NCBI GenBank assembly: GCA_965285935.1
Contig: OZ260662.1
Coordinates: 64,790,001-64,854,000, forward strand
Length of the DNA: 64,000 nucleotides
DNA from: Ophelia neglecta
Lineage: Eukaryota
Direction: 5' to 3'
Below the pieces are notes generated by a model that was given only the letters and a program-made list of their open reading frames with translations, searched no databases and was not told where the DNA came from. Shown in pieces: positions 20,901-64,000 of this stretch. The position numbers and the translations under genes are program-made. Each line of letters starts with the position of its first letter. Position 1 is the first letter of the stretch.

Positions 20901-23900
20901 TCCCAGCATAAGGAAAACACATTTGTGGTTTGCTTTATGCACGTTCCATAGCCACAAATACCACGGCGCACTCTAGCATTTAATTTCTTACACTATTGGC
21001 CAACTCTAGCGTAGGGCAACGTTAAGCACAATTTATCCCAAATCCTTCTTTTTTAAAGTTGCTCCAATTAAACCCATGCATGCCAACATTTGTTCATACA
21101 GATCTGTTGTGCCTTACCCCGCACCCAGACGACAACCAAGTCACGTTTACTTCTCATTTAAAGATCCCTCGCTATATCCATTCTTTAACGTAACTCTGAG
21201 CCAGGTAGTTGTGTGTTTAACGACCGTAATGATGGATCTACTTCTTTTGGCTGTATTTTGATGATCCCTCACATTATGCCAGGGGCAAAGTCATCTTTAA
21301 GTCAGCTCTAAGTAATTCAATGGTGGATTCTGGCATTTTTACAAGCTGATGTTTGTTTCAGACTCAGTACTTAAGTGTTTTATTATCTGTAAATGGTGAA
21401 TATGTAATGCATAGCAGGACACCTCTGGAGTTCACTTGACGACGACTTATAGTAGAATGTGACAGGTCCCTGTTTGTCAATTGACCCTCTAAATCCCCAC
21501 TCTCTTAGTCTCTGTTACTGCTCTGAATGCTATGTAAAGTAGGCATTGTTTCAGCATATTGTTCCAGGGTTGAACCATCATCGCGCAATATTTTTACAAC
21601 AAATGGACACTTACAATGCTGGTTAAGTGGAAAAGGAAGGAAATATAAATCTACCATTTTGTGTTTGACAGGAAATTCTTTTGTCAACTTGTACATTGTT
21701 AGCTCCGACAGCACGTAATACTTGCAGTTCCCGTAGCGACATTCTTTTCTTAGCTGGTACTTTTATTCAAATAATGTCTGAACAAGAACCATATTCATTA
21801 CATGCACGCATATGTTATTACGCTTTTGACTCGAAGTCAGAGAGGACAATGGTCTGACCAGTTGTGAACAAGCCCTCTCCCTGGGATGTTTACGTCATGC
21901 CGCATTGGGTTGCGTCAAACGATTGATCATTGCGTCAGAGGGTGTCAACAAGCCCGATTAGGAAACTGCGCCCCAACGGCAAAGATCGGCGGTTAATATA
22001 CTCGCACGCTGTCAGAGAGCAGACGAGAGATGACTAGAGTACAATGACCGCACTGGAAAGTGGGCATAACCAGTCACGGGATCAAGTATGGCATGATTTA
22101 TAATCCCCGAATTCAAACCGTCCCCCACCTCTCACTGCTACAATTGTAGTTGATTTATATGCCTGGGAAAATACCCGGTTGCAAGTAGTTATTGTTGCTC
22201 ATGCATGCGCAATGCCCTCTCGTCGATACCTCGGCCTAGCCGATGTGAGGACCGGTCCGTCAAATTAGAGGGTCGGAACTGCCTCGTTAAATGTCTTTTA
22301 TTTTCACAAAACTCAATGGTTTGTGGTGCTTTGAAGCATATCTTGCATTAATGAATATATTCACGGGATATCCCCTTTTATATTGGCCCCACATTTATTC
22401 CGTGTGAACCACAATTGCATTGAGATTTCAAACCTCATTCCGTCTCAAATTGGATTTTAAATGGCTAGATTTGGTATTGTTCGGTTTTAATGAAATGCGC
22501 CACCACAAGGGAGCTAAAGATGTTCTTTTTACGACAAGGACATTCATTAGCGTCCAATTAAAGGCATCCCAACGCCATATCTTGTGTGTGGGAATTCTCA
22601 CGGAAAATCGGGCAAATATTCGAACCATATGGTTTTATCCTTCTTGAACGTTTTTGTCGAAGCGGGTGTTGGCTAGGCCTGAACGTACTGGGAAGTTATT
22701 GCACATGACCCAAGTAAATATCTATAATGAGATACTTGTTTGGCACGTAATTATGGACAAAATGGTATAGAAAATCACCCTGAACGATATATGTTTATTT
22801 AATAGGCCTACGGGCCTAAAGAGGAAATCAGATTTTGGGTCTATTCTGTGTGGTTTTCGGAGGTTTAAGAACGCACCGGGCATGAAGATCAGCAGCATCG
22901 CTGAAGCCAATGTTCAAGGCCTGGGAGAAAGATAGAAATGGCCCGAGGCTGCTGTTCTGGCAACTGTTTTTGTATTATAGCGCATTTAGGCAGTTACGTG
23001 GTTTGGGTGATATAACCAGAGATGTTCTTTGTTAAGACCCATAGCAGAATGTAACATTTGGTGCTAAGTAACTGTTAGCCGTGGGCTGCCGATATATTCC
23101 TCTTTCTCGCGCGCTATCTCTCTGTCTCGTCTGGCTGAGCAACCGAAGTGTTTCTATTGTTGCAAACCACGATCGCATACCGATGTACTCGGTCCAATGC
23201 TTCTCTCGCGAACTTGGAGAAGTTTCCCACGCTCCGAGCTTCTTTGATTTGTGTACTTTTTATTTTAAGATCTCCATTACTTTTAGTAAACATTGCTTTG
23301 AATGGTATGGTAAATAAAAGATTTCTCATTGTATTTTTGTCTGTAAGGGTGGTGTGATAAGTCCTGTTTAGAGTTTGCTGACGTACTTGGCCTGCTACAA
23401 AGACATGCAGGATGGTTGTGAAAGTGGCCAAGACCGTTCATTTCTAACTCAATAAACTACCGGGTAAAGAACTTTAGCGAAATCAAATTAAAATGTTAGA
23501 TTTGAAACGGTATTAACGGTGTCCTATCATGGCCCATGTACGATTGGGCCTGTTAAAATAAAGCTAGATAGTTACCTAACCTATTATATGGCATTGCGAG
23601 GTAGCTTTGAAAATTGATGACGCCAGTAATAATGGTGTAGCTTTACAGAACCACTTCAGTCTCAGGTACAATTCAGTCTACAGGTATTCAGCAAATTTGA
23701 TTAAAACTCAAGTGGCAAGGATTGGATGTTGCGTTTGCTACGTATGAGTGGTGAGAAACAGGTTTTCAAGTCCAAGGGAACGATTGTTGCCCTTGGAAGT
23801 AGCTGATTGATGGTATTATTAAGACTAAACACCTTGGCTAGCTCTTAGGGATTCATTCACCCACACCAATGGTTTCAAATTGGACCATTAAACAATGATG

Positions 23901-55200: not shown

Positions 55201-56969
55201 GTGACTAGGCCGGTCAGAGGTCACACGTGCAGGCTGTGAGAACTCGTCACACACGCTCGGGTTCCGCGAAGCGACAAGTGCGTGGAAGCTGAATGTCCTT
55301 GTTTAGCGTGTCTACACCTGTGCCTGGGGAGACGAGATTTAATGACACAATTATGACATCTAAAATGGCTGAAAACACTTCCAATAGTCTGCCAGGAAGT
55401 TTGTTCTGTGGCCTATATGACTGCTGCCAGATTCGCAGACGACAGGTTGATTTTCATCGCGAACAATACATTGAACTATGAACAAATTTGCGCTCAAACA
55501 AGCACCTGTTGAATAAAGGCCATCTGATTTCCATGAATTAATATGCGAACAAGGTTATTATAATAGACTGTGTGTGCACAATGCCAGGTTGACACTTGAA
55601 CATGTAAATTATGAAGCGATGCTGTGAGACAAGAGTGACCCAGGAGACCTATTGAGGTGTCAATTATTGCACGTCCCTTGGCCTTGCATGCACAGTGCTT
55701 AAAAAGTGAACATGTAGCATCATGCCATTTTCTCTTTCACGCCAATTAAATAGGGGTGTATATTTTCTAACTAAACCGTCATAGGGGAGGTTGCTTTTGT
55801 AGCAGTGACTGAACCATTATAGACATGGAACATGTCATCTTTGAAAAATGAGGACGAATCATGCAGGGCTTTTGCATGGATTTTGAATCAAGTAAATTTA
55901 CGGTGTTCCTTTGTCATATGTATATAGGTCTAACTAAAGTTTAACGAATAACATTCGTTATTTTTTCAAATTTGAATTAAATGTCTTATGTCAGCAATAT
56001 TGTGTGGGTGTTGCGGGCAAATCGGTCGCCTGAACATAGTTGTGGTTTATTAAAATGCCACAAAAAATCCATAGTATGATAGGCCTATAGGAAAGAAGCA
56101 TTCCCTCGACCCACGCGGCTGACCGAGGACAGCTATGCGGGAAACTTTACACTTTTTCAAGACGATCACAGGCTAGTGCAATGAATCACAGGAAAGTGAT
56201 ATTACTTTCAGTTTGATTGTTTTCGTCAGCTGCGGTCGTTTTCTGATTATGATTATGTTGCCAATAAACACGCATCCAAAATGAAGATTAAAGAGGATTT
56301 CTGAAAGGCGGATATGGATATGAGCGTGTCTCGGGTCGTGTTGATCTCAGTTATCGACTGTTGCCGTGGGCTTGTGACGGAATTACACGAGAAATCCCGA
56401 CATGCAAAGGAATCTTGTGAAACGGAAACAATAGAGTTTGTCTCAGTGCGCAGCAGCGAGCTACTCATCAAAGAGGCCGCATGCTATCCAATCGTCTAGA
56501 TAACATACCCGTTTTGTCCGGTCTTCATTCTAGCCAATTTAACGGGATTTATGATACATGTAATTCGGAAACCCTACCGATATCTACCCCAGCAACTAAA
56601 TTCTCTTATCTCTCAATATTTCCAAGCGCTCGGGTAATTTCACGCTCATGATCACTGGCGATCACCGGAGCGCTTAGAACATCAAAGGGCTGGTGTTTAA
56701 TAATGGCATCATCTGTAAACATGCGAAGAAAAAGCAGACGAGATAATTGTATTTCCGCGAGGTCATACGACCGATATCAGAGGGGTGTCCGACTGGGTTC
56801 GGTCGCAGTTTGTTTCATAAGTGCTATGACTAATATTTGTTGTGGTCATCGCAGCTTTTGTCATGTAGCAGGCCCATATAGTAATAAGAAGTACTGGCCG
56901 GTGGTGTCCTGGCTGAAACTGGGCGACTTTGTGTACTTTCGCCATTTATCTCTGTGCGTTCAGCTCTGC

Positions 56970-58900
56970 AAGTAATGGGAAAATCAAACACGCGAGCAAA
57001 TATGCTTTAGCGATTAGACGTCAAACACTTATGACAAGGCCCGGGTGTACCTGTGGGTCCCCTGCTTTATTTTGGAGAGGTAGGCCTTTTGATAAACCTG
57101 AGACTCACTGTGGGAAAGCCAAATAAATGTGGTGAACCAGCGCCGTGGACTGGAGGTCCGGGCCAAACACTGGCCACGACTTTTTCTCGTGCGTGTGAAA
57201 ATCATTTGCTCTGTTGTCAGCTGGCACTTATCCAATATGTTTTACCTCCTATGAATTCCGGTGCACTAACTTTAATACTCGCCGACCGCCTGTTGCCAAA
57301 TTTCGCAGACGACACTCGAGGTTTGTGAACGCGCTCGACACAGCTCTGGCACGTTCGTTCACACGTCCTATAATACCCAATTGCATCAATATTGCAGTAA
57401 TGACAGAATATACATAATAAAAAGTAGACAAATAAACAACAACAATCGAGAGCTTTCGCTGTCACGGGTGTCACTAAATAGTGAGGTAAACATTAACGAA
57501 AAATGAATAAACAGATAAAATGCAGGAATCATTTTCCCACGATCGCTTGTAAATTAAACACCAAGGTAAATGCAGATATTTGATCTGTCCTAACTTATCA
57601 ACATTGCCTTTATTTACTTTTTCTGTATTAAGATGTGGCTTCCCCATTCTCTACAGGCCTACACGCTCACTGAAATACGGTGGCCTTGGGTTTATCTGAA
57701 TCGCTTGAAGCCAAAAATCGCCAGCGATGCCATTACTGTGGCGTGGTTTAATTTTAGGTTCAGTTAAAGAGTTAGTGACAGAGTTATAATGGTGGTGTTG
57801 TGTCCTGATCTCAGGATATAGCTCCGCCAAGCCCTCAAGCGTCAACTTTTACTTGTAATCAAAAGCCTACTTAAAAGATGTCCACCAATATGATGATTTA
57901 CGAAGTTAGCTTACATCAATGGATCAAGGACTTCACCAATAATTGTATTCCATAACTTTTCATTTATAACTCGCCTTTAGCTAAATGCTTTATGTGTTTA
58001 TAAGACACATCTGCATATGGTAATAGGCAAATGATTCTTGGGCATGGAAAAACTAAACTAACTCGTGTATGTCCCATGCACGAATGATGCAATAAAGTTT
58101 CTGGGAACAAAATTCGTTTGACCGGTTGATCTAATAAGGTAGATGACATTTTGCCAAAGATCCTTCTTGTCAAACATCCCTTGAAGGCTCGCATATGGTA
58201 GTCTAGCTTTAGGTGCCAGAGGACTGGCATTAGACTGTGTTCTATATAGGAAAACTCCCGGCAGGCGCACATAAGTTATTAAATTTTATGTGATTCAAAT
58301 AACCTGCACTATGCGTACATGCAGCAGTGTGGGAAAATTGCCGATGCGGTTGTAAGACTATGTATGTGGTAGATGAATTGCTGTGCTGTGTAAAAAGCTT
58401 TTGATAATATCTGCGAAATTGGATTGACTTTTCTCCTATAGAGCAAGCAGGATACTTATCGTACGGGCTTGTCTATTATGATATTGTTCCGTTTTGGTGA
58501 ACTGCGTAGAACCCCTTGTTATAAAAACAGGGCGGGTATGTTTGTTTGGTCTTAGAGACTTCCAGCTACACACCTGTTATAATGTCATGGATGGGCAACA
58601 AGTATCTTTTCTTGCTCTTTTTCATCCCCAAATGTCATTTAGGGGCTCTACACATGGGAAAATTGGAGGATTTTTACATAAGTGAATGATTTTCCCACGC
58701 GCATGGGCATTCCTGAGCAGTGATTCGTAACACGGTGAGCGTTAGTGAATACCTGTGCTTTGTGTGCCGGTATGTGCTATCGGGACTTCTATTTACCGAA
58801 AGGTCAAACTCGGGAACCCCTGAGGTGCTTTTGGTTGCAGGTGGGAGGAGTTTTCCCATACTCGACTCTGCACACCAGACAATGGGTCTGGCACGTGGAT
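56970..58900. promoter_or_regulatory. Candidate Notch-responsive upstream enhancer region of HES-B
   Basis: CSL-type sites at 57109 (TGTGGGAA), 57192 (CGTGTGAA), 57534 and 58692 (TTCCCACG), 58328 (TGTGGGAA); HES-type sites CACGCG 56989 and 58696, CTCGTG 57186, TGGCACGTG 58889; GCAGGTG 58837. Confidence 0.65.
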
Positions 58901-58989
58901 GCCATAAAAACACATACGTTGTGGGGTTTGATTGACGGCCGCAAACATACTGCCTACATATGTTACCTATAAGGTCACAATTGAACTGG

Positions 58990-59180
58990 AGTCTGTCGGC
59001 CCATTGGTGTGCGCCGATTGGCTGAGCTATTCAGGTGCTCTGCGTGTGCCGCACGCTGATTGGACACGCACTCTTGGACCGAAGCGTGGGAATATAGCTG
59101 CGAGCAATTGTTTGTTAAAGTGCCGCGCAGGTGGCCTGCGCTATAAAATCCCGTCTCCTACCTGCATGCCTTCAGTCGTG
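58990..59180 (+). promoter_or_regulatory. HES-B core/proximal promoter
   Basis: TATAAAA 59142-59148; TCAGT initiator with A at 59174 (32 nt from TATA start); three inverted CCAAT boxes (ATTGG near 59004, 59017, 59059); CSL site CGTGGGAA 59085-59092; E-box GCAGGTG 59127-59133. Confidence 0.8.
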
Positions 59181-59270
59181 TGGTCGGTGTGCAACAAGTG
59201 CAGTCCGTGTCAGGCGTATCACAATTCTATATACAACTCCTTGGATTATACAAACCCCAGCCAGTGTACA

Positions 59271-59324
59271 ATGACAGACAAAGTCGTAGAAGCAGCGAAA
59301 ATGTCTTCTCAGCAACTCAGAAAG
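59271..59324 (+). CDS. HES-B coding exon 1
   Basis: acaATGa start about 97 nt after the TATA/Inr-predicted TSS; ends AAG|gtaaac at RK|. Confidence 0.9.
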
Positions 59325-61735
59325 GTAAACAAAAATTTCTTATTTATTTTATAAGTTATATACACGGTGTTTCACCCGGGCGAGTGTTGATATTGATGGA
59401 GCCGTGAGGACACCGTGTACTCCGTGCCACAGGTGCATGGCAAACACTGATTTGAGAGGACCTTAATGATGACAGTGGACACTTTGACTGTGATCTCAAT
59501 GTCCATTTGGGGCGGTATATTACTGAGATGCAGGACAACTGCCACGACTTGGAATCTTACAGATTATAACCGTGTTATGGTTATTTATCACTGCTTTACA
59601 CTTGCTGCACTTGTCCACCTGTTGCTCGGGTGCTGACACCTGTTGTCGGTTGACACGTGCAGTGATTGACTATGGCGCGTCTATCCTACACACTGCTCCA
59701 TGTCACATGGCAAGTGCCAAGAGCGAAGGACCATCATGTCAACAACTGTCCCGGATCATCGTATTATCACCTGTGTTACCCTGATATCTGGAGACGAGAC
59801 ATTAACCCTCCGATGTGTTAATGATATATTAGCCGTCCCTTCCAATGTCAACCATTTACTAGGAAACATCAACTCTCCTGTCCCCCATGATTAGTATACA
59901 TAAACCGATCTCTGTAAACTTCAAGTTAACAAATGATCGATGAAAATTTTAATTCATTTCATTCTTGTGAGTCAACTAATAAATATACCAATTTGATTTA
60001 TTTATTTATTTAGCATTAAATGGAGACGGTAACCATTTACTTATGAATCTATATTTAAATTTACAGATCAAGAAACCCATGATTGAGCGTCGCCGTCGTG
60101 AACGAATCAACGATTCTCTCAATCAGCTGAAAGCCTTGGTCTTAGATGCGATGAACAAAGAGGTAAGTTGTCAACTCTGTGAACGATGTTGGTAAAGTTT
60201 TAATCTAGAACAAGTGCCTGGCACTAGGGGAAGGGTTTCACAATATACAAGTCAGCTTGTAAATACCCCAGAATATCACTAAACCAAGCGAGCAGTGATC
60301 TCTGGGAAAGCTTCACGACACGCGCCTCATCACGCTCTGTCTACGGCAAATAGTCTTGGTTATACTCCAGTGACCTCACATAAAGGCACTTCCTCTCTCA
60401 AACTGGTGGAATGATTTTCTCACGGCTTCTCCACCCTTTCAGCAACTGATGGTTAACGGTTGCAGGGTCTTGTCCTTTGCAGCAAAGGCACGTGGCCCAG
60501 CCACCCAAGCGAGGTACAAGGCAAAGGGCAAAGTTTTACTGCAAAATTTAAACTCCCGACTTCACCACTGGAATGAAGCGTGGGTTGGGAACCTTTTGAA
60601 AGTAAATCACACGTCTCTCGCTCAAATTAGACGGTGAATGTCTAATACATTCAAATCAAAGCCCTGGTGAGGGCCCACGTGATAATGAAGTGCCATCCCA
60701 TAGTGGGTAGCTGATAATTACAAGAACCTGAACGACCATCTATTATAAAGACATCCTGTAGAGTTTTCACTTTCTTTTGTGATTGGTATAGCATCGTCTG
60801 ATTTATAACAACAACCACCGTTAAATGTGCACATTTTAAATATATCTTTTCTTTCTTCTCAGGAATCTCGTTACTCGAAAATGGAGAAAGCGGACATCCT
60901 CGAGATGACTGTAAAGCACCTGAAGAGCGCTCAGCGCCAGTCCCTGCTGATGTCTCCCGATGGAAACGGGCAAAATATGCTAGGAAAATACCGCACAGGA
61001 TTTGCCGAGTGTGCCCATGAGGTCGGACGCTATCTAGGCTCCGTGGATGGTCTTACACCAGAAGTGCGCATGCGTCTGATGGGTCACCTCTCAGGCTGCA
61101 TGCAGAGCGCAGAAACCCGCATTCCTGGTGGCGCTTGCGCAACATCAACTCTCTCTGGGTCCCCGGAAGCGAGGTCTTCTCTGCCGGCGGCCACTCAACT
61201 ATCTTCCCTTCCTGGTGCCAATGTACAGATTTTGTCGGTGAACACGAGTGATGCTTCCCAGACGGCGCGCGTTCCCAGTGTGAGCCCGATGCTGCCTGCC
61301 AGTCCGGTCAGCTCCCCAGAACTAACAATCACCTCTCCTATGATCGTGGTCAGTCCAAACTCGAACCAACAACCAAATGGTCTTCTGAAGGATGCCATCC
61401 CACTGTACTTTGCTTCCAGCAGTGTGTCAGTTGGCTCCTCTCGACCGGCTAGCAGCGCCCCACCCTCTCCACAATACTCATGCTCCTCCACAGACAGCTT
61501 CGGCCACTCTCCTGTCCACAGGCAGAGCCCCGAGCTCGCCCAAGACGCTCCTCAGTTCTACCGGGCACATTTCACCGCCATCTCTTCATCTCAGAGTCCT
61601 CCTTACGTTAGAGAGTACAAGCCAACCATCATCAGAGCCGAGGAACACAACAAAGCCAAGCGAGCTTTTGAAACTGACTCTTTTCCCGCCATGCAGTGTA
61701 AAGCCTTCAACCTACCAGTGTGGAGGCCTTGGTGA
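59271..61735 (+). CDS. HES: HES-B: Hairy/E(spl)-family bHLH-Orange-WRPW transcriptional repressor, join(59271..59324,60067..60162,60863..61735), 340 aa
   Basis: Spliced translation MTDKVVEAAKMSSQQLRK|IKKPMIERRRRERINDSLNQLKALVLDAMNKE|ESRYSKMEKADILEMTVKHLK..., Orange domain (KYRTGFAECAHEVGRYL...RLMGHLSGCM), terminal WRPW-stop. Introns are GT..AG, both phase 0, at the same positions as HES-A introns 1 and 2. Confidence 0.95.
60067..60162 (+). CDS. HES-B coding exon 2 (basic region + helix 1)
   Basis: tttacag| acceptor, 96 nt, GAG|gtaagt donor. Confidence 0.95.
60863..61735 (+). CDS. HES-B coding exon 3 (helix 2, Orange, WRPW)
   Basis: cttttctttcttctcag| acceptor; open frame through to ...PVWRPW* (track ORF 60827..61735). 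Confidence 0.96.
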   Translation, partial: ESRYSKMEKADILEMTVKHLKSAQRQSLLMSPDGNGQNMLGKYRTGFAECAHEVGRYLGSVDGLTPEVRMRLMGHLSGCMQSAETRIPGGACATSTLSGSPEARSSLPAATQLSSLPGANVQILSVNTSDASQTARVPSVSPMLPASPVSSPELTITSPMIVVSPNSNQQPNGLLKDAIPLYFASSSVSVGSSRPASSAPPSPQYSCSSTDSFGHSPVHRQSPELAQDAPQFYRAHFTAISSSQSPPYVREYKPTIIRAEEHNKAKRAFETDSFPAMQCKAFNLPVWRPW

Positions 61736-62160
61736 CGTGTCTCATCAGAGGAACTTTACTCCCCCAAAAAACTCTGCCTGCCTTGTTCTCATGGTGCATA
61801 AAGACTGTGTCCATTTTAAATTTCTATGGACGACGTTCTCGGGCTAGAACATTCAATTCATCAAATACATTATATTACAATGTCCTTTTTTAATCATGTA
61901 TATATATTCCCGAATTGCATTCCAGTTAAGTTTAACACTTGCATTTACTTTGCATAATTATGGTACTTAGTTCAAAAAGTCTCCGCTGTGTGGAGTTTAA
62001 AGCATTCCATTTGATAATGTCTTCCAAAACGAGGCTTCCTCTTTCAGTGGTTTATCTAATAAATGGAGGACCTCATTCGACATTCTCAAAGATTAAGCAT
62101 TCTGTGATGAATATTTTTAATTTTATAATGACTTAATAAAGCATTCCATTGAAACTTATT
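61736..62160 (+). promoter_or_regulatory. HES-B 3' UTR with GY box, K box and miR-1-type seed sites
   Basis: GTCTTCCA 62019-62026; CTGTGAT 62102-62108; CATTCCA 62003 and 62142; AATAAA 62058 and 62135. Confidence 0.6.
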
Positions 62161-64000
62161 TCATGTGTTCATTGGTGATTACTTCTGAATAATTTATAAT
62201 TTCTATATACAATAATCAACCCACGACGAACAAACGTTTAGAATATTGATATAATCCTAAGAATTTAGCATCCCATTTTTATAAATAAATGCCATTCACT
62301 TATTATTAATTTATAATGACGAATTCTTTAAAACTATAATAGGGGCCTATTCTAAACCCAATTTAAAAAAAAATGCTGCCCTGACCAATTCCAAAATTCT
62401 AAATTCTACACGGTTTATATTTTTCCTTCCTAAGGATTCTTTGTTAAACAATGTGAATATCTCTGGCTGTATGTTGAAGTCAAAGTAGACCACGTGTTTC
62501 TTAGTGAAAGCAAAATAGTGTCTTGATTATACGTGCATTGGTTAAAAGTAAGGTACCAACAAAGAGGTGGCGACCTCTTCTGGCAAGCATTGATACTAAT
62601 CAGCACTTTCATTTTAACCTGGACGTTGAACTTCGGTTTCCAACTGGCAAACTTATTCAATGACTAGGCCTACGTAATAAAGAGATGGTGATAATCCATC
62701 AAATAACTTGAAAGTGCGATTGAGTTAATACATCTTAATTACTGTAGTTTGTGATTATATATCAATAAACTCATTGCCCAACAATTTCTTATAAATTTTA
62801 ATGTGAAAAGATATGTATACGCAAAGCCAGCATATTCATAAGCGAATGCATCGATGCTCTTTCAAATACTGCTTACATTCTTTGCCGTGACTGGACTAGC
62901 AATATTCTTATTAAGTCTTGATAGGATCAGCTGGATACAAAAGGCACAATGGCCAAATAACCAGTTCTCAGGTAGCATATAATTTTACCTAGGGTTAAGC
63001 TGTAAGGACCATAGGACAGGTATGTGACGTTTTGAGGCTCCTGCCCAATGGACGCTCCCCCAGGGCGTATTAAGTTTCCGCAAGGTATTTCTTTTTTCTG
63101 CCAATCAATGGATAAACCACCAATGCCCTTCCCAAAGTCTATTGAACACATTCCTTGGCATCTCGGATGCCACAATCAATGAATTATACTTAGAGAGGCG
63201 CCACAAAATTTACTCAGTGTCTAATTTGGATTAACGATTGGTTACAATTGCAACCGTGTATTGTTCACGTGGGCGAGATTACCTCGGTAATCTCACGGAA
63301 ATAATACACCACATTGCCTTCGGGCGGGATTTGCTGCATAATTGCTGGGCGTTTCACTTTGTTGTCTGCCAAAGAGATTAAACTTGTTGTTCTGGCTATC
63401 AGGCTTCCTATGAATATTTTTACTGGTATCACCCGCATTGCCTGAGGGCCTTAGTAAACCAGGGCCGCGTGCGCTGAAATAAAATATAGCGAGCTGGATG
63501 TAGGGCTTTCGAGAGGGGAGTGGGGGAGGGTCCGCCATTAAATTAAGATGAGGTTTTGTGATGGGTAACTTTCCAAGGGGTGGAGATGGGTGGGTTAGTT
63601 GAATGGCTAAGTTCATCTACCCTCTCTGGGAGCCGACACGTAGGTCATACACATGAAGCTGCTTGAGATAATTTGAGTAAAAATTGGGGCTCCTGTCCCC
63701 GTGCCTCCTCGGAAGCCCCCCCCCCCCCCCCCCATATAGACCCACAAATGATATACAAAGTGCTACAGATGAGAGTATATAAGCCCAAATCCCTTCAGAC
63801 CTATTACCTTTCAGGGCAAGCGAATTGCTTCGGATTGCAGTCCCCTGTTTATGACCGTCACGGTATAAAATAAAGCTTTGTTCTGGTCTTTTAAGTGACA
63901 AAGGCCGTATCTACAAATATTTAACTGGTACTTCAGGGGTGCAAAATTCGCCAGTTCCGCAGACAAGCCGATTGCAATGATACTGACACAGGCTTTGAAA

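What the first reader, a model, noticed from the sequence alone, without database searches (positions are those of the whole stretch)
57192..60424. Recurrent 15-bp composite element: CSL/Su(H) site fused to an AAT(C/G)ATT palindrome, four copies around HES-B
Seen: CGTGTGAAAATCATT (57192-57206, +), AATCATTTTCCCACG (57527-57541), AATGATTTTCCCACG (58685-58699) and AATGATTTTCTCACG (60410-60424, intron 2). Read on the CSL strand, all four are CGTG[G/A/T]GAA-AAT[C/G]ATT. The flanks are unrelated, so this is not a repeat family. The variable position in the left half takes exactly the three known CSL variants (CGTGGGAA, CGTGAGAA, CGTGTGAA), and the right half varies only at the palindrome centre. A weaker relative, AATGGGAAAATCAAA, is at 56974. 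Established: HES genes are direct Notch/CSL targets, usually via single sites, Su(H) paired sites or Su(H)+proneural codes; I know of no described fixed-spacing CSL+AATSATT composite. Inference: a zero-spacer co-binding site for CSL and an unknown partner (homeodomain or Gfi/Senseless-like AATC binder), specific to HES-B. I found no intact copy near HES-A.
Basis: partly seen in the sequence, partly recalled or inferred. Interest (0 to 1): 0.85.

Follow-up and report, generated by a model that had tools for sequence, protein, structure and literature searches.

The report
Four identical extended CSL sites at HES-B
Four exact copies of a 15-base Notch-pathway (CSL) binding site with an unusual fixed tail surround one HES repressor gene far more often than chance allows. 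Most of the tail matches an already known extended CSL element, and whether a second protein reads the rest is untested.

Summary
CGTGDGAAAATSATT occurs exactly four times in the window (57192+, 57527-, 58685-, 60410-), all within 3.2 kb around HES-B. The flanks are unrelated, the DNA is single-copy, and the window holds no 1-mismatch copies.

The 762-Mb genome holds only 20 exact copies, about 14 of them independent. A simple overlap model expects about 13. So the motif is not a genome-wide code, but the local cluster is far beyond chance (P about 5e-13 given the six CGTGDGAA sites there).

The interpretation needs re-parsing. The first 11 bases are the published 'complete TP1' RBPJ/CSL element CGTGGGAAAAT. 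The palindrome centre is polymorphic between the two haplotypes (C or A). The new part is therefore only N-ATT(C/T), whose recurrence is moderately significant (about 1e-4 before post hoc correction).

The four tandem HES paralogs and about 85 HES loci from other animals lack the composite. A similar form, CGTGGGAAAACTATT, is perfectly conserved between two other species.

Conservation in the one close relative could not be tested.

Best reading (0.45): these are Notch/CSL response elements kept as a 15-16-bp unit because something also reads the A/T flank. This is a new variant of a known kind and of moderate interest.

The parts
57192..57206 (+). Site 1: CGTGTGAAAATCATT, about 2.0 kb upstream of the TATA box
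57527..57541 (-). Site 2: CGTGGGAAAATGATT. The other haplotype has the centre changed (57530 C>A on the + strand)
58685..58699 (-). Site 3: CGTGGGAAAATCATT, about 0.45 kb upstream of the TATA box. It faces an inverted CATGGGAAAAT at 58653-58663 across a 31-nt gap
60410..60424 (-). Site 4: CGTGAGAAAATCATT, in intron 2
56974..56988 (+). Weaker relative AATGGGAAAATCAAA (RTGGGAA-type CSL core plus AAT)
58328..58338 (+). TP1-like CSL 11-mer TGTGGGAAAAT without the ATT tail
58653..58663 (+). CATGGGAAAAT, a TP1-like 11-mer inverted relative to site 3
59085..59092 (+). Promoter-proximal plain CSL site CGTGGGAA (followed by TAT), about 55 bp upstream of the TATA box
59142..59148 (+). TATAAAA box of HES-B
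   Evidence: read directly
58837..58844 (+). Proneural-type E box GCAGGTGG (a second one is at 59127-59134)
59271..59324 (+). HES-B exon 1 coding part (ATG to the GT donor)
   Evidence: read directly; ORF
60067..60162 (+). HES-B exon 2 (basic region and helix 1; Pfam HLH)
60863..61735 (+). HES-B exon 3 (Orange domain, WRPW, stop)
60605..60862 (+). Conserved non-coding block at the 3' end of intron 2, about 80% identical to the related species' contig L021. That contig begins 180 bp downstream of site 4

Best explanation
The four 15-mers are functional Notch-response elements of HES-B. Each carries a canonical CSL/Su(H) core, CGTG[G/A/T]GAA, and varies only at the one core position that the YGTGDGAA working consensus leaves free. 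The next three bases (AAT) complete the known extended 'TP1' CSL element. The further N-ATT(C/T) is kept invariant because something besides the CSL core reads the A/T-rich flank directly next to CSL. The most likely reader is a second DNA-binding protein whose site abuts or overlaps the CSL footprint. Its core would be AATCA/TGATT, which fits TALE/Pbx-type or Gfi/Senseless-type binders, or a dimer on AAT-N-ATT. This would give HES-B a Notch response different from that of its four tandem paralogs, which have only plain CSL sites.

Shown here: the sequence pattern, its statistics, its restriction to HES-B and its single-copy status.

Inferred: CSL binding, Notch dependence, and the existence and identity of a partner.
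For: Four exact copies and no intermediate forms. Given six CGTGDGAA sites at the locus and a genome-wide P(flank | core) of 4.2e-4, P is about 5e-13. Even given five TP1-like 11-mers, four with N-ATT gives p about 1.7e-4. The flanks are unrelated and the DNA is single-copy. All differences among copies and haplotypes fall on two positions: the D position, which YGTGDGAA leaves free, and the palindrome centre. The gene is a bHLH-Orange-WRPW HES gene in a locus rich in CSL sites (35 against 12.9 expected in the window). The zero-offset link between the CSL core and AATNATT is seen only at these four sites among all sequence sampled from this genome. In another lineage, a CSL site upstream of a HES-B-like gene is perfectly conserved together with 14 bp of its 3' flank (CGTGGGAAAACTATTTTACGAC) while the surroundings diverged. 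This shows that 3' flanks of CSL sites can be under constraint.
Against: There is no genome-wide enrichment of the composite (12.9 expected, about 14 independent seen). None of the other independent copies examined showed a Notch-related context. Eleven of the 15 bases are already explained by the known TP1 element, and AAT after CSL cores is enriched about 2.6-fold at HES loci of other animals, so the part that needs a partner is only 3-4 bp. No known factor's consensus fits AAT-N-ATT well. The composite is absent from about 85 HES loci of other animals. There are no conservation, binding or expression data.
Confidence: 0.45

Rival explanations
1. These are simply high-affinity, TP1-type extended CSL sites with no partner protein. 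The A/T tail reflects CSL's own flank or DNA-shape preference. Alternatively, the last 3-4 bases are shared through common descent or short-patch conversion among the locus's own sites.
For: CGTGGGAAAAT is the published high-affinity 'complete TP1' RBPJ element. AAT follows CSL cores 12/125 times against a 3.7% background at HES loci of other animals. It also follows cores at HES-B (5 of 8) and at the paralog on L035 (3 of 7). The weak relative at 56974 and site 3 share 22 of 31 bases, which hints at old local duplication.
Against: The same paper states that the last three TP1 bases are not needed for RBPJ-DNA interaction. The ATT tail lies beyond the 11-nt TP1 element. Other TP1-like sites at this locus and in paralogs lack ATT. 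Four of five sharing N-ATT gives p about 1.7e-4.
Confidence: 0.25
2. The 15-mer is the long recognition sequence of a single factor unrelated to CSL, for example a multi-zinc-finger protein. The CSL resemblance would then be incidental.
For: Thirteen invariant positions with no degenerate copies is more typical of long-footprint factors than of ordinary enhancer sites. Sites lie both upstream and in an intron.
Against: The match to CSL is exact, beside a classic Notch target family, in a locus with many other CSL sites. The variable core position is exactly the one that the YGTGDGAA consensus leaves free. Genome-wide copies are at background frequency, whereas a dedicated factor would be expected to have more sites.
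Confidence: 0.1
3. The copies are non-functional. They arose by a mutational process (templated short-patch copying) or by coincidence in a CSL-rich region.
For: The composite is found at only one locus. It is absent near paralogs and in other animals' HES loci. No functional data exist.
Against: Chance is excluded at P of 1e-8 or lower, even allowing any shared 7-mer flank (and the estimate in the full report). Substitutions among copies are confined to two positions, which argues for purifying selection rather than recent copying. The flanks show no trace of copied tracts.
Confidence: 0.12

Closest known systems
TP1-type extended RBPJ/CSL element (CGTGGGAAAAT, defined in Epstein-Barr virus EBNA2-responsive promoters and used in Notch reporters)
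   Same: Sites 2 and 3 contain it exactly. Sites 1 and 4 contain it with T or A at the fifth position, the one that the YGTGDGAA working consensus leaves free.
   Different: Here a further N-ATT(C/T) is invariant. The sites are in an invertebrate HES gene rather than a viral promoter. The AAT of TP1 is reported as dispensable for RBPJ binding.
Su(H)/CSL paired sites (SPS) of HES/E(spl) promoters
   Same: Several CSL sites serve one HES gene. The position 3' of GAA is where the SPS spacer lies.
   Different: There is no inverted CSL-like partner at a 15-17 bp spacer at any of the four sites (at least 3 mismatches of 8). Site 3 faces an inverted CATGGGAAAAT, but at 31 nt.
PTF1 bipartite element (E box plus TC box TTTCCCACG bound by Ptf1a, an E protein and RBPJ/RBPJL); recalled from memory
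   Same: It is a fixed-geometry composite in which a CSL-type site is read together with a second DNA-binding protein.
   Different: There is no E box at a common distance. Only site 1 has a CAGCTG (11 bp beyond the site's end), and sites 2-4 have none at a comparable offset. Here the second element abuts the CSL site.
Su(H) plus proneural ('S+A') code of E(spl)-type genes; recalled from memory
   Same: HES-B has GCAGGTGG E boxes at 58837 and 59127 together with CSL sites.
   Different: That code has no fixed spacing and does not involve an A/T tail on the CSL site.
Published CSL-containing composite elements such as KLF::RBPJ (PMC12338572)
   Same: They set a precedent for stereospecific composites that include an RBPJ motif.
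   Different: The partner motif and geometry differ. Exact-sequence searches for the GTG[G/A]GAAAAT[C/G]ATT versions of the motif, both strands, found no paper.

Membership tests
CSL/Su(H) binding site | Match to YGTGDGAA (core TGGGAA with tolerated G/A/T at the fifth position) | tested here: met
   All four sites match
CSL/Su(H) binding site | Bound by CSL and Notch-responsive | not testable with these tools
   Needs EMSA, ChIP or a reporter
TP1-type extended CSL element | 11-mer CGTGGGAAAAT | tested here: met
   Exact in sites 2 and 3; sites 1 and 4 differ only at position 5
Su(H) paired site (SPS) | Second CSL site in inverted orientation with a 15-17 bp spacer | tested here: not met
   The best inverted candidates have at least 3 of 8 mismatches
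PTF1 bipartite site | E box one or two helical turns from the TC box | tested here: not met
   Only site 1 has a nearby CAGCTG; there is no common offset
Dispersed repeat, MITE or transposon fragment | Many genomic copies sharing flanks or terminal repeats | tested here: not met
   The region is single-copy, the flanks are unrelated, and there are only 20 exact genomic copies
Genome-wide cis-regulatory code (CSL+AATSATT) | Composite more frequent than expected from its parts across the genome | tested here: not met
   12.9 expected against about 14 independent copies seen
HNF1-type palindrome GTTAATNATTAAC (consensus recalled from memory) | Both TTAAT half-sites | tested here: not met
   Only AAT-N-ATT matches; the outer positions are GAA and CNN
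Gfi/Senseless site TAAATCAC(A/T)GCA (consensus recalled from memory) | AATC core plus the extended consensus, in a constant orientation | tested here: inconclusive
   An AATC core is present in every copy, but on the opposite strand in site 2, and the bases after AATCA do not fit
HES/E(spl) bHLH-Orange repressor gene (the neighbouring gene) | HLH domain, Orange domain, C-terminal WRPW | tested here: met
   Pfam HLH 3e-07 and Hairy_orange 5e-15; WRPW before the stop

The most novel reading that the evidence does not exclude
CGTGDGAA-AAT-N-ATT is a true zero-spacer composite. CSL and a second, still unidentified A/T-reading factor bind side by side. That factor may be a Pbx/Exd-type or Gfi/Senseless-type binder of AATCA/TGATT, or a dimer on AAT-N-ATT. 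The pairing would form a locus-specific Notch response code that separates one HES paralog from its tandem neighbours. The conserved CGTGGGAAAACTATTTTACGAC of another lineage may be a diverged version of the same syntax.
Probability: 0.3. Interest if true: 0.7.

Novelty: new variant of a known kind. Interest (0 to 1): 0.45.

Why it matters
How tandemly duplicated HES/E(spl) genes that all carry CSL sites acquire different Notch responses is an old question. A fixed-geometry CSL-plus-partner element confined to one paralog would be a concrete and easily mutated handle on it. It would also add a new entry to the short list of CSL composite syntaxes (SPS, PTF1). If the tail only reflects flank preference, the finding is an unusually clean natural example of the TP1-type extended CSL element in an invertebrate Notch target.

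Tried and rejected
1. Cross-species test. The only close relative found is contig L021 from run ERR14113986. It is 78% identical over exon 3 and the end of intron 2, but it starts 180 bp downstream of site 4. I tried to reach its neighbouring contigs through ORF translations of exon 2 and of the promoter/exon 1 region. These returned only distant homologues or nothing.

2. The look-up of sequencing runs listed only the source organism.

3. Read laying on those runs gives contigs only. The lack of variants outside 57480-58049 is therefore not evidence of constraint.

4. Other clusters of near-matches in the genome were followed up. The three on C1 at 30.35-30.38 Mb share flanks and are a repeat. 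The pair on C1 at 56.31 Mb lies in a LINE-like element.

5. The distant HES loci L039-L044 and 80 metagenome-derived HES loci have no copy with 1 mismatch or fewer.

6. The MITE reading (sites 1 and 2 as terminal inverted repeats) is rejected. There is no family in the genome and no target-site duplication.

7. NFAT/Rel (GGAAAAT), TEAD (CATTCC), Onecut, HNF1 and ZNF143 readings were considered from memory. Each was rejected because the invariant and variable positions do not fit.

8. Literature searches for the exact sequences and for CSL composites found no precedent.

9. The organism's phylum could not be established. An annelid is possible, judged only from my recollection that some JGI accession series among the best exon 2 matches are gutless-worm metagenomes; the tools gave no host name.

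10. The spliced HES-B model was searched exon by exon only, and the joined protein was not built.
Full report
**Observation**

The pattern CGTGDGAAAATSATT matches the window exactly four times: 57192-57206 (+), 57527-57541 (-), 58685-58699 (-) and 60410-60424 (-). None appeared in 100 dinucleotide-preserving shuffles. The distribution is all-or-none. With up to three mismatches allowed, the 64 kb holds no 1-mismatch copy and one 2-mismatch copy. The 3-mismatch copies (16 in total against 12.2 expected) are at chance level. Aligned in CSL orientation with 40 bp on each side, the four sites and a fifth genomic copy share the 15-mer plus only two isolated single-base columns. The repeat finder shows that sites 2-4 share one more base, giving CGTGNGAAAATSATTC.

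**Gene context**

The neighbouring gene is a three-exon HES gene.
- Exon 1 is 59271-59324.
- Exon 2 is 60067-60162 (Pfam HLH, 3e-07).
- Exon 3 is 60863-61735 (Hairy_orange 5e-15, ending in WRPW).

A TATAAAA box lies at 59142-59148. Sites 1-3 are therefore about 2.0, 1.6 and 0.45 kb upstream of it, and site 4 is in intron 2.

The gene is the second of five tandem HES genes on contig C2. The window as a whole is rich in CSL-type octamers, with 35 against 12.9 expected. I searched the exons separately and did not build the joined protein.

**Is it a repeat?**

No. The stretch 56900-60500 is unique in the 762-Mb genome, apart from a weak repeat at window 57678-57868 that touches none of the sites.

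The genome holds 20 exact copies of the 15-mer, against 6 for the reversed control. Not all 20 are independent:
- Six belong to one repeat family on C7.
- Two are segmental duplicates on C1.
- One on C1 (30.38 Mb) belongs to a local repeat whose other members are near-matches with shared flanks.

About ten independent copies remain outside HES-B. None of those examined lay in a cluster of CSL sites, and the 3-kb stretches checked for long ORFs showed nothing Notch-related.

**Statistics**

Genome-wide there are 30,580 CGTGDGAA and 11,718 GAAAATSATT. GAA makes up 1.8% of positions in the sequence sampled. The overlap model therefore expects 12.9 composites, which is essentially what is seen. 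The composite is not a genome-wide code.

Locally the picture is the opposite. With P(flank | core) = 4.2e-4 and six CGTGDGAA cores in the interval, four hits have P of about 5e-13. I also made a post hoc-proof estimate: any four of the CSL sites at the locus (six to eight, depending on CGTG versus YGTG) sharing any 7-mer flank with one free position, on either side. My calculation from base composition gives about 1e-8. Chance is excluded.

**Re-parsing the element**

The first eleven bases, CGTGGGAAAAT, are the published 'complete TP1 consensus'. This is a high-affinity RBPJ site used in Notch reporters. The same source states that the last three bases are not needed for RBPJ-DNA contact (bioRxiv 10.1101/2020.05.20.106054).

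TP1-like 11-mers are themselves concentrated at this locus. TGGGAAAAT occurs five times in 3.7 kb, out of nine in the whole window. AAT follows the core in 5 of 8 CSL sites at HES-B and in 3 of 7 at the paralog on L035, against a 4% background.

About 85 HES loci of other animals were recovered from public contigs (L039-L044 and L046-L125, 410 kb). In these, AAT follows unique CSL cores 12 times in 125, against a 3.7% background (p = 0.0025). The AAT is therefore best seen as part of an extended CSL element.

What is really new is the following N-ATT(C/T). Given five TP1-like sites at HES-B, four carrying N-ATT has p of about 1.7e-4. That falls to about 1e-2 after allowing for the post hoc choice of triplet. 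This is real but much less dramatic than the 15-mer statistic suggests.

**Variation**

Contigs of the source individual show a second haplotype across 57480-58049 that differs at about 5% of positions. One of its differences, 57530 C>A, falls exactly on the palindrome centre of site 2, and no other difference lies inside any of the four sites. All differences among the four copies and the two haplotypes therefore sit on two positions: the core position that the YGTGDGAA consensus leaves free (G, A or T) and the palindrome centre. This argues for long-standing purifying selection on the other thirteen positions rather than recent copying. My rough estimate is p of about 0.03 for any two positions. 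Because contigs drop variants, the absence of differences elsewhere in the region is not evidence of constraint.

**Specificity of the arrangement**

I scanned all the sequence I could sample from this genome: the window, much of the rest of the HES cluster (seven 10-kb stretches), other HES genes and control stretches. The CSL core and AATNATT are joined at zero offset only at the four HES-B sites, and other offsets are sporadic. The paralogs have ordinary CSL sites.
- There is no inverted CSL partner at SPS spacing.
- There is no E box at a common distance.
- Site 3 faces an inverted CATGGGAAAAT across a 31-nt gap.

**Other species**

The close relative (L021, run ERR14113986) aligns at 78% through exon 3. 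The last 258 bp of intron 2 are about 80% identical in the pairwise alignment. Most of the 3' flank does not align, so neutral sequence has diverged beyond recognition and conservation there would be informative. Unfortunately the contig begins 180 bp downstream of site 4, and no other contig of that organism could be reached.

None of the roughly 85 distant HES loci has a copy with one mismatch or fewer.

One indirect point favours constrained CSL flanks. Two well-diverged species have a HES-B-like second exon (86% nucleotide identity there, about 71% in exon 3). They share an upstream module in which CGTGGGAAAACTATTTTACGAC is the longest perfectly conserved block, with divergent sequence on both sides. 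Its first 15 bases differ from the HES-B composite at two positions. They differ from the second haplotype of site 2 at one position.

**Mechanism**

The best-supported reading is that these are the Notch/CSL response elements of HES-B, maintained as a 15-16-bp unit. CSL accounts for the core, and the known TP1 extension accounts for AAT. The invariant ATT(C/T) needs another reader. I put 0.45 on a second DNA-binding protein abutting CSL.

Candidates recalled from memory are binders of AATCA/TGATT (Pbx/Exd-type, Gfi/Senseless-type) or a dimer on AAT-N-ATT. None fits cleanly, because the core flips strand in site 2 and the outer positions do not match HNF1.

The rivals are:
- TP1-type high-affinity sites with no partner (0.25).
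- A single long-footprint factor unrelated to CSL (0.10).
- Non-functional copies (0.12).

Nothing here shows binding, Notch dependence or expression.

**Comparison and novelty**

The element contains the TP1 element and meets the CSL site definition. It fails the definitions of SPS, PTF1 sites, dispersed repeats and a genome-wide code. I found no paper containing the GTG[G/A]GAAAAT[C/G]ATT versions of the sequence and none describing such a syntax. I rate it a new variant of a known kind. It is a clean and statistically robust single-locus pattern whose novelty shrinks once the TP1 overlap is recognised, and its functional meaning rests on tests I could not run.

Noticed in passing
window 22587-22602: In HES-A intron 2, two CSL octamers abut in inverted orientation with no spacer (TGTGGGAATTCTCACG). 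This is a palindromic pair, unlike the classical 15-17 bp SPS.
   Followed up: no
window 60605-60862 (and L021:1-276): The last 258 bp of HES-B intron 2 are about 80% identical to the related species, while most of the 3' flank does not align. This is a conserved non-coding element. It starts just inside a TAAATCACA (Gfi/Senseless-like) sequence at 60602-60610, of which the relative's contig covers only AATCACA onward.
   Followed up: partly
window 62079-62169: This is the only 3'-UTR block that aligns with the relative (77%). It includes a 32-nt identical run at 62079-62110 that contains TGTGAT.
   Followed up: partly
window 57480-58049: The two haplotypes differ at about 5% of positions here (28 SNPs). 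The contigs show almost no differences in 56900-57480 or 58050-60600. Contig data cannot tell whether this reflects constraint or bubble-popping in assembly.
   Followed up: partly
L040:1440-1650 and L073:1600-1810: Two diverged species with a HES-B-like gene share an upstream module with two CSL sites. One site is embedded in a perfectly conserved 22-mer, CGTGGGAAAACTATTTTACGAC, whose end resembles a posterior Hox/Cdx site (TTTTACGAC, recalled from memory).
   Followed up: partly
window 58837-58844 and 59127-59134: Two proneural-type E boxes GCAGGTGG flank the promoter-proximal CSL site, out of only four in the whole window. This suggests a Su(H)-plus-proneural architecture.
   Followed up: no
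G000:C7:104.47-104.85 Mb and C7:89.39 Mb (L013-L018): A repeat family of more than 2 kb, 90-99% identical between copies, happens to contain CGTGTGAAAATCATT. It accounts for six of the 20 genomic copies.
   Followed up: partly
L045 (G000:C1:56305001-56315000): Long ORFs of 509 and 1173 aa look like a LINE-type retroelement and carry two 1-mismatch copies of the motif. An ACE-like exon lies nearby at 2564-2908.
   Followed up: no
L085, L092, L094: A HES locus of another animal carries CGTGTGAAAATAATATTTTCAC, a near-perfect palindrome built on a TP1-like site.
   Followed up: no
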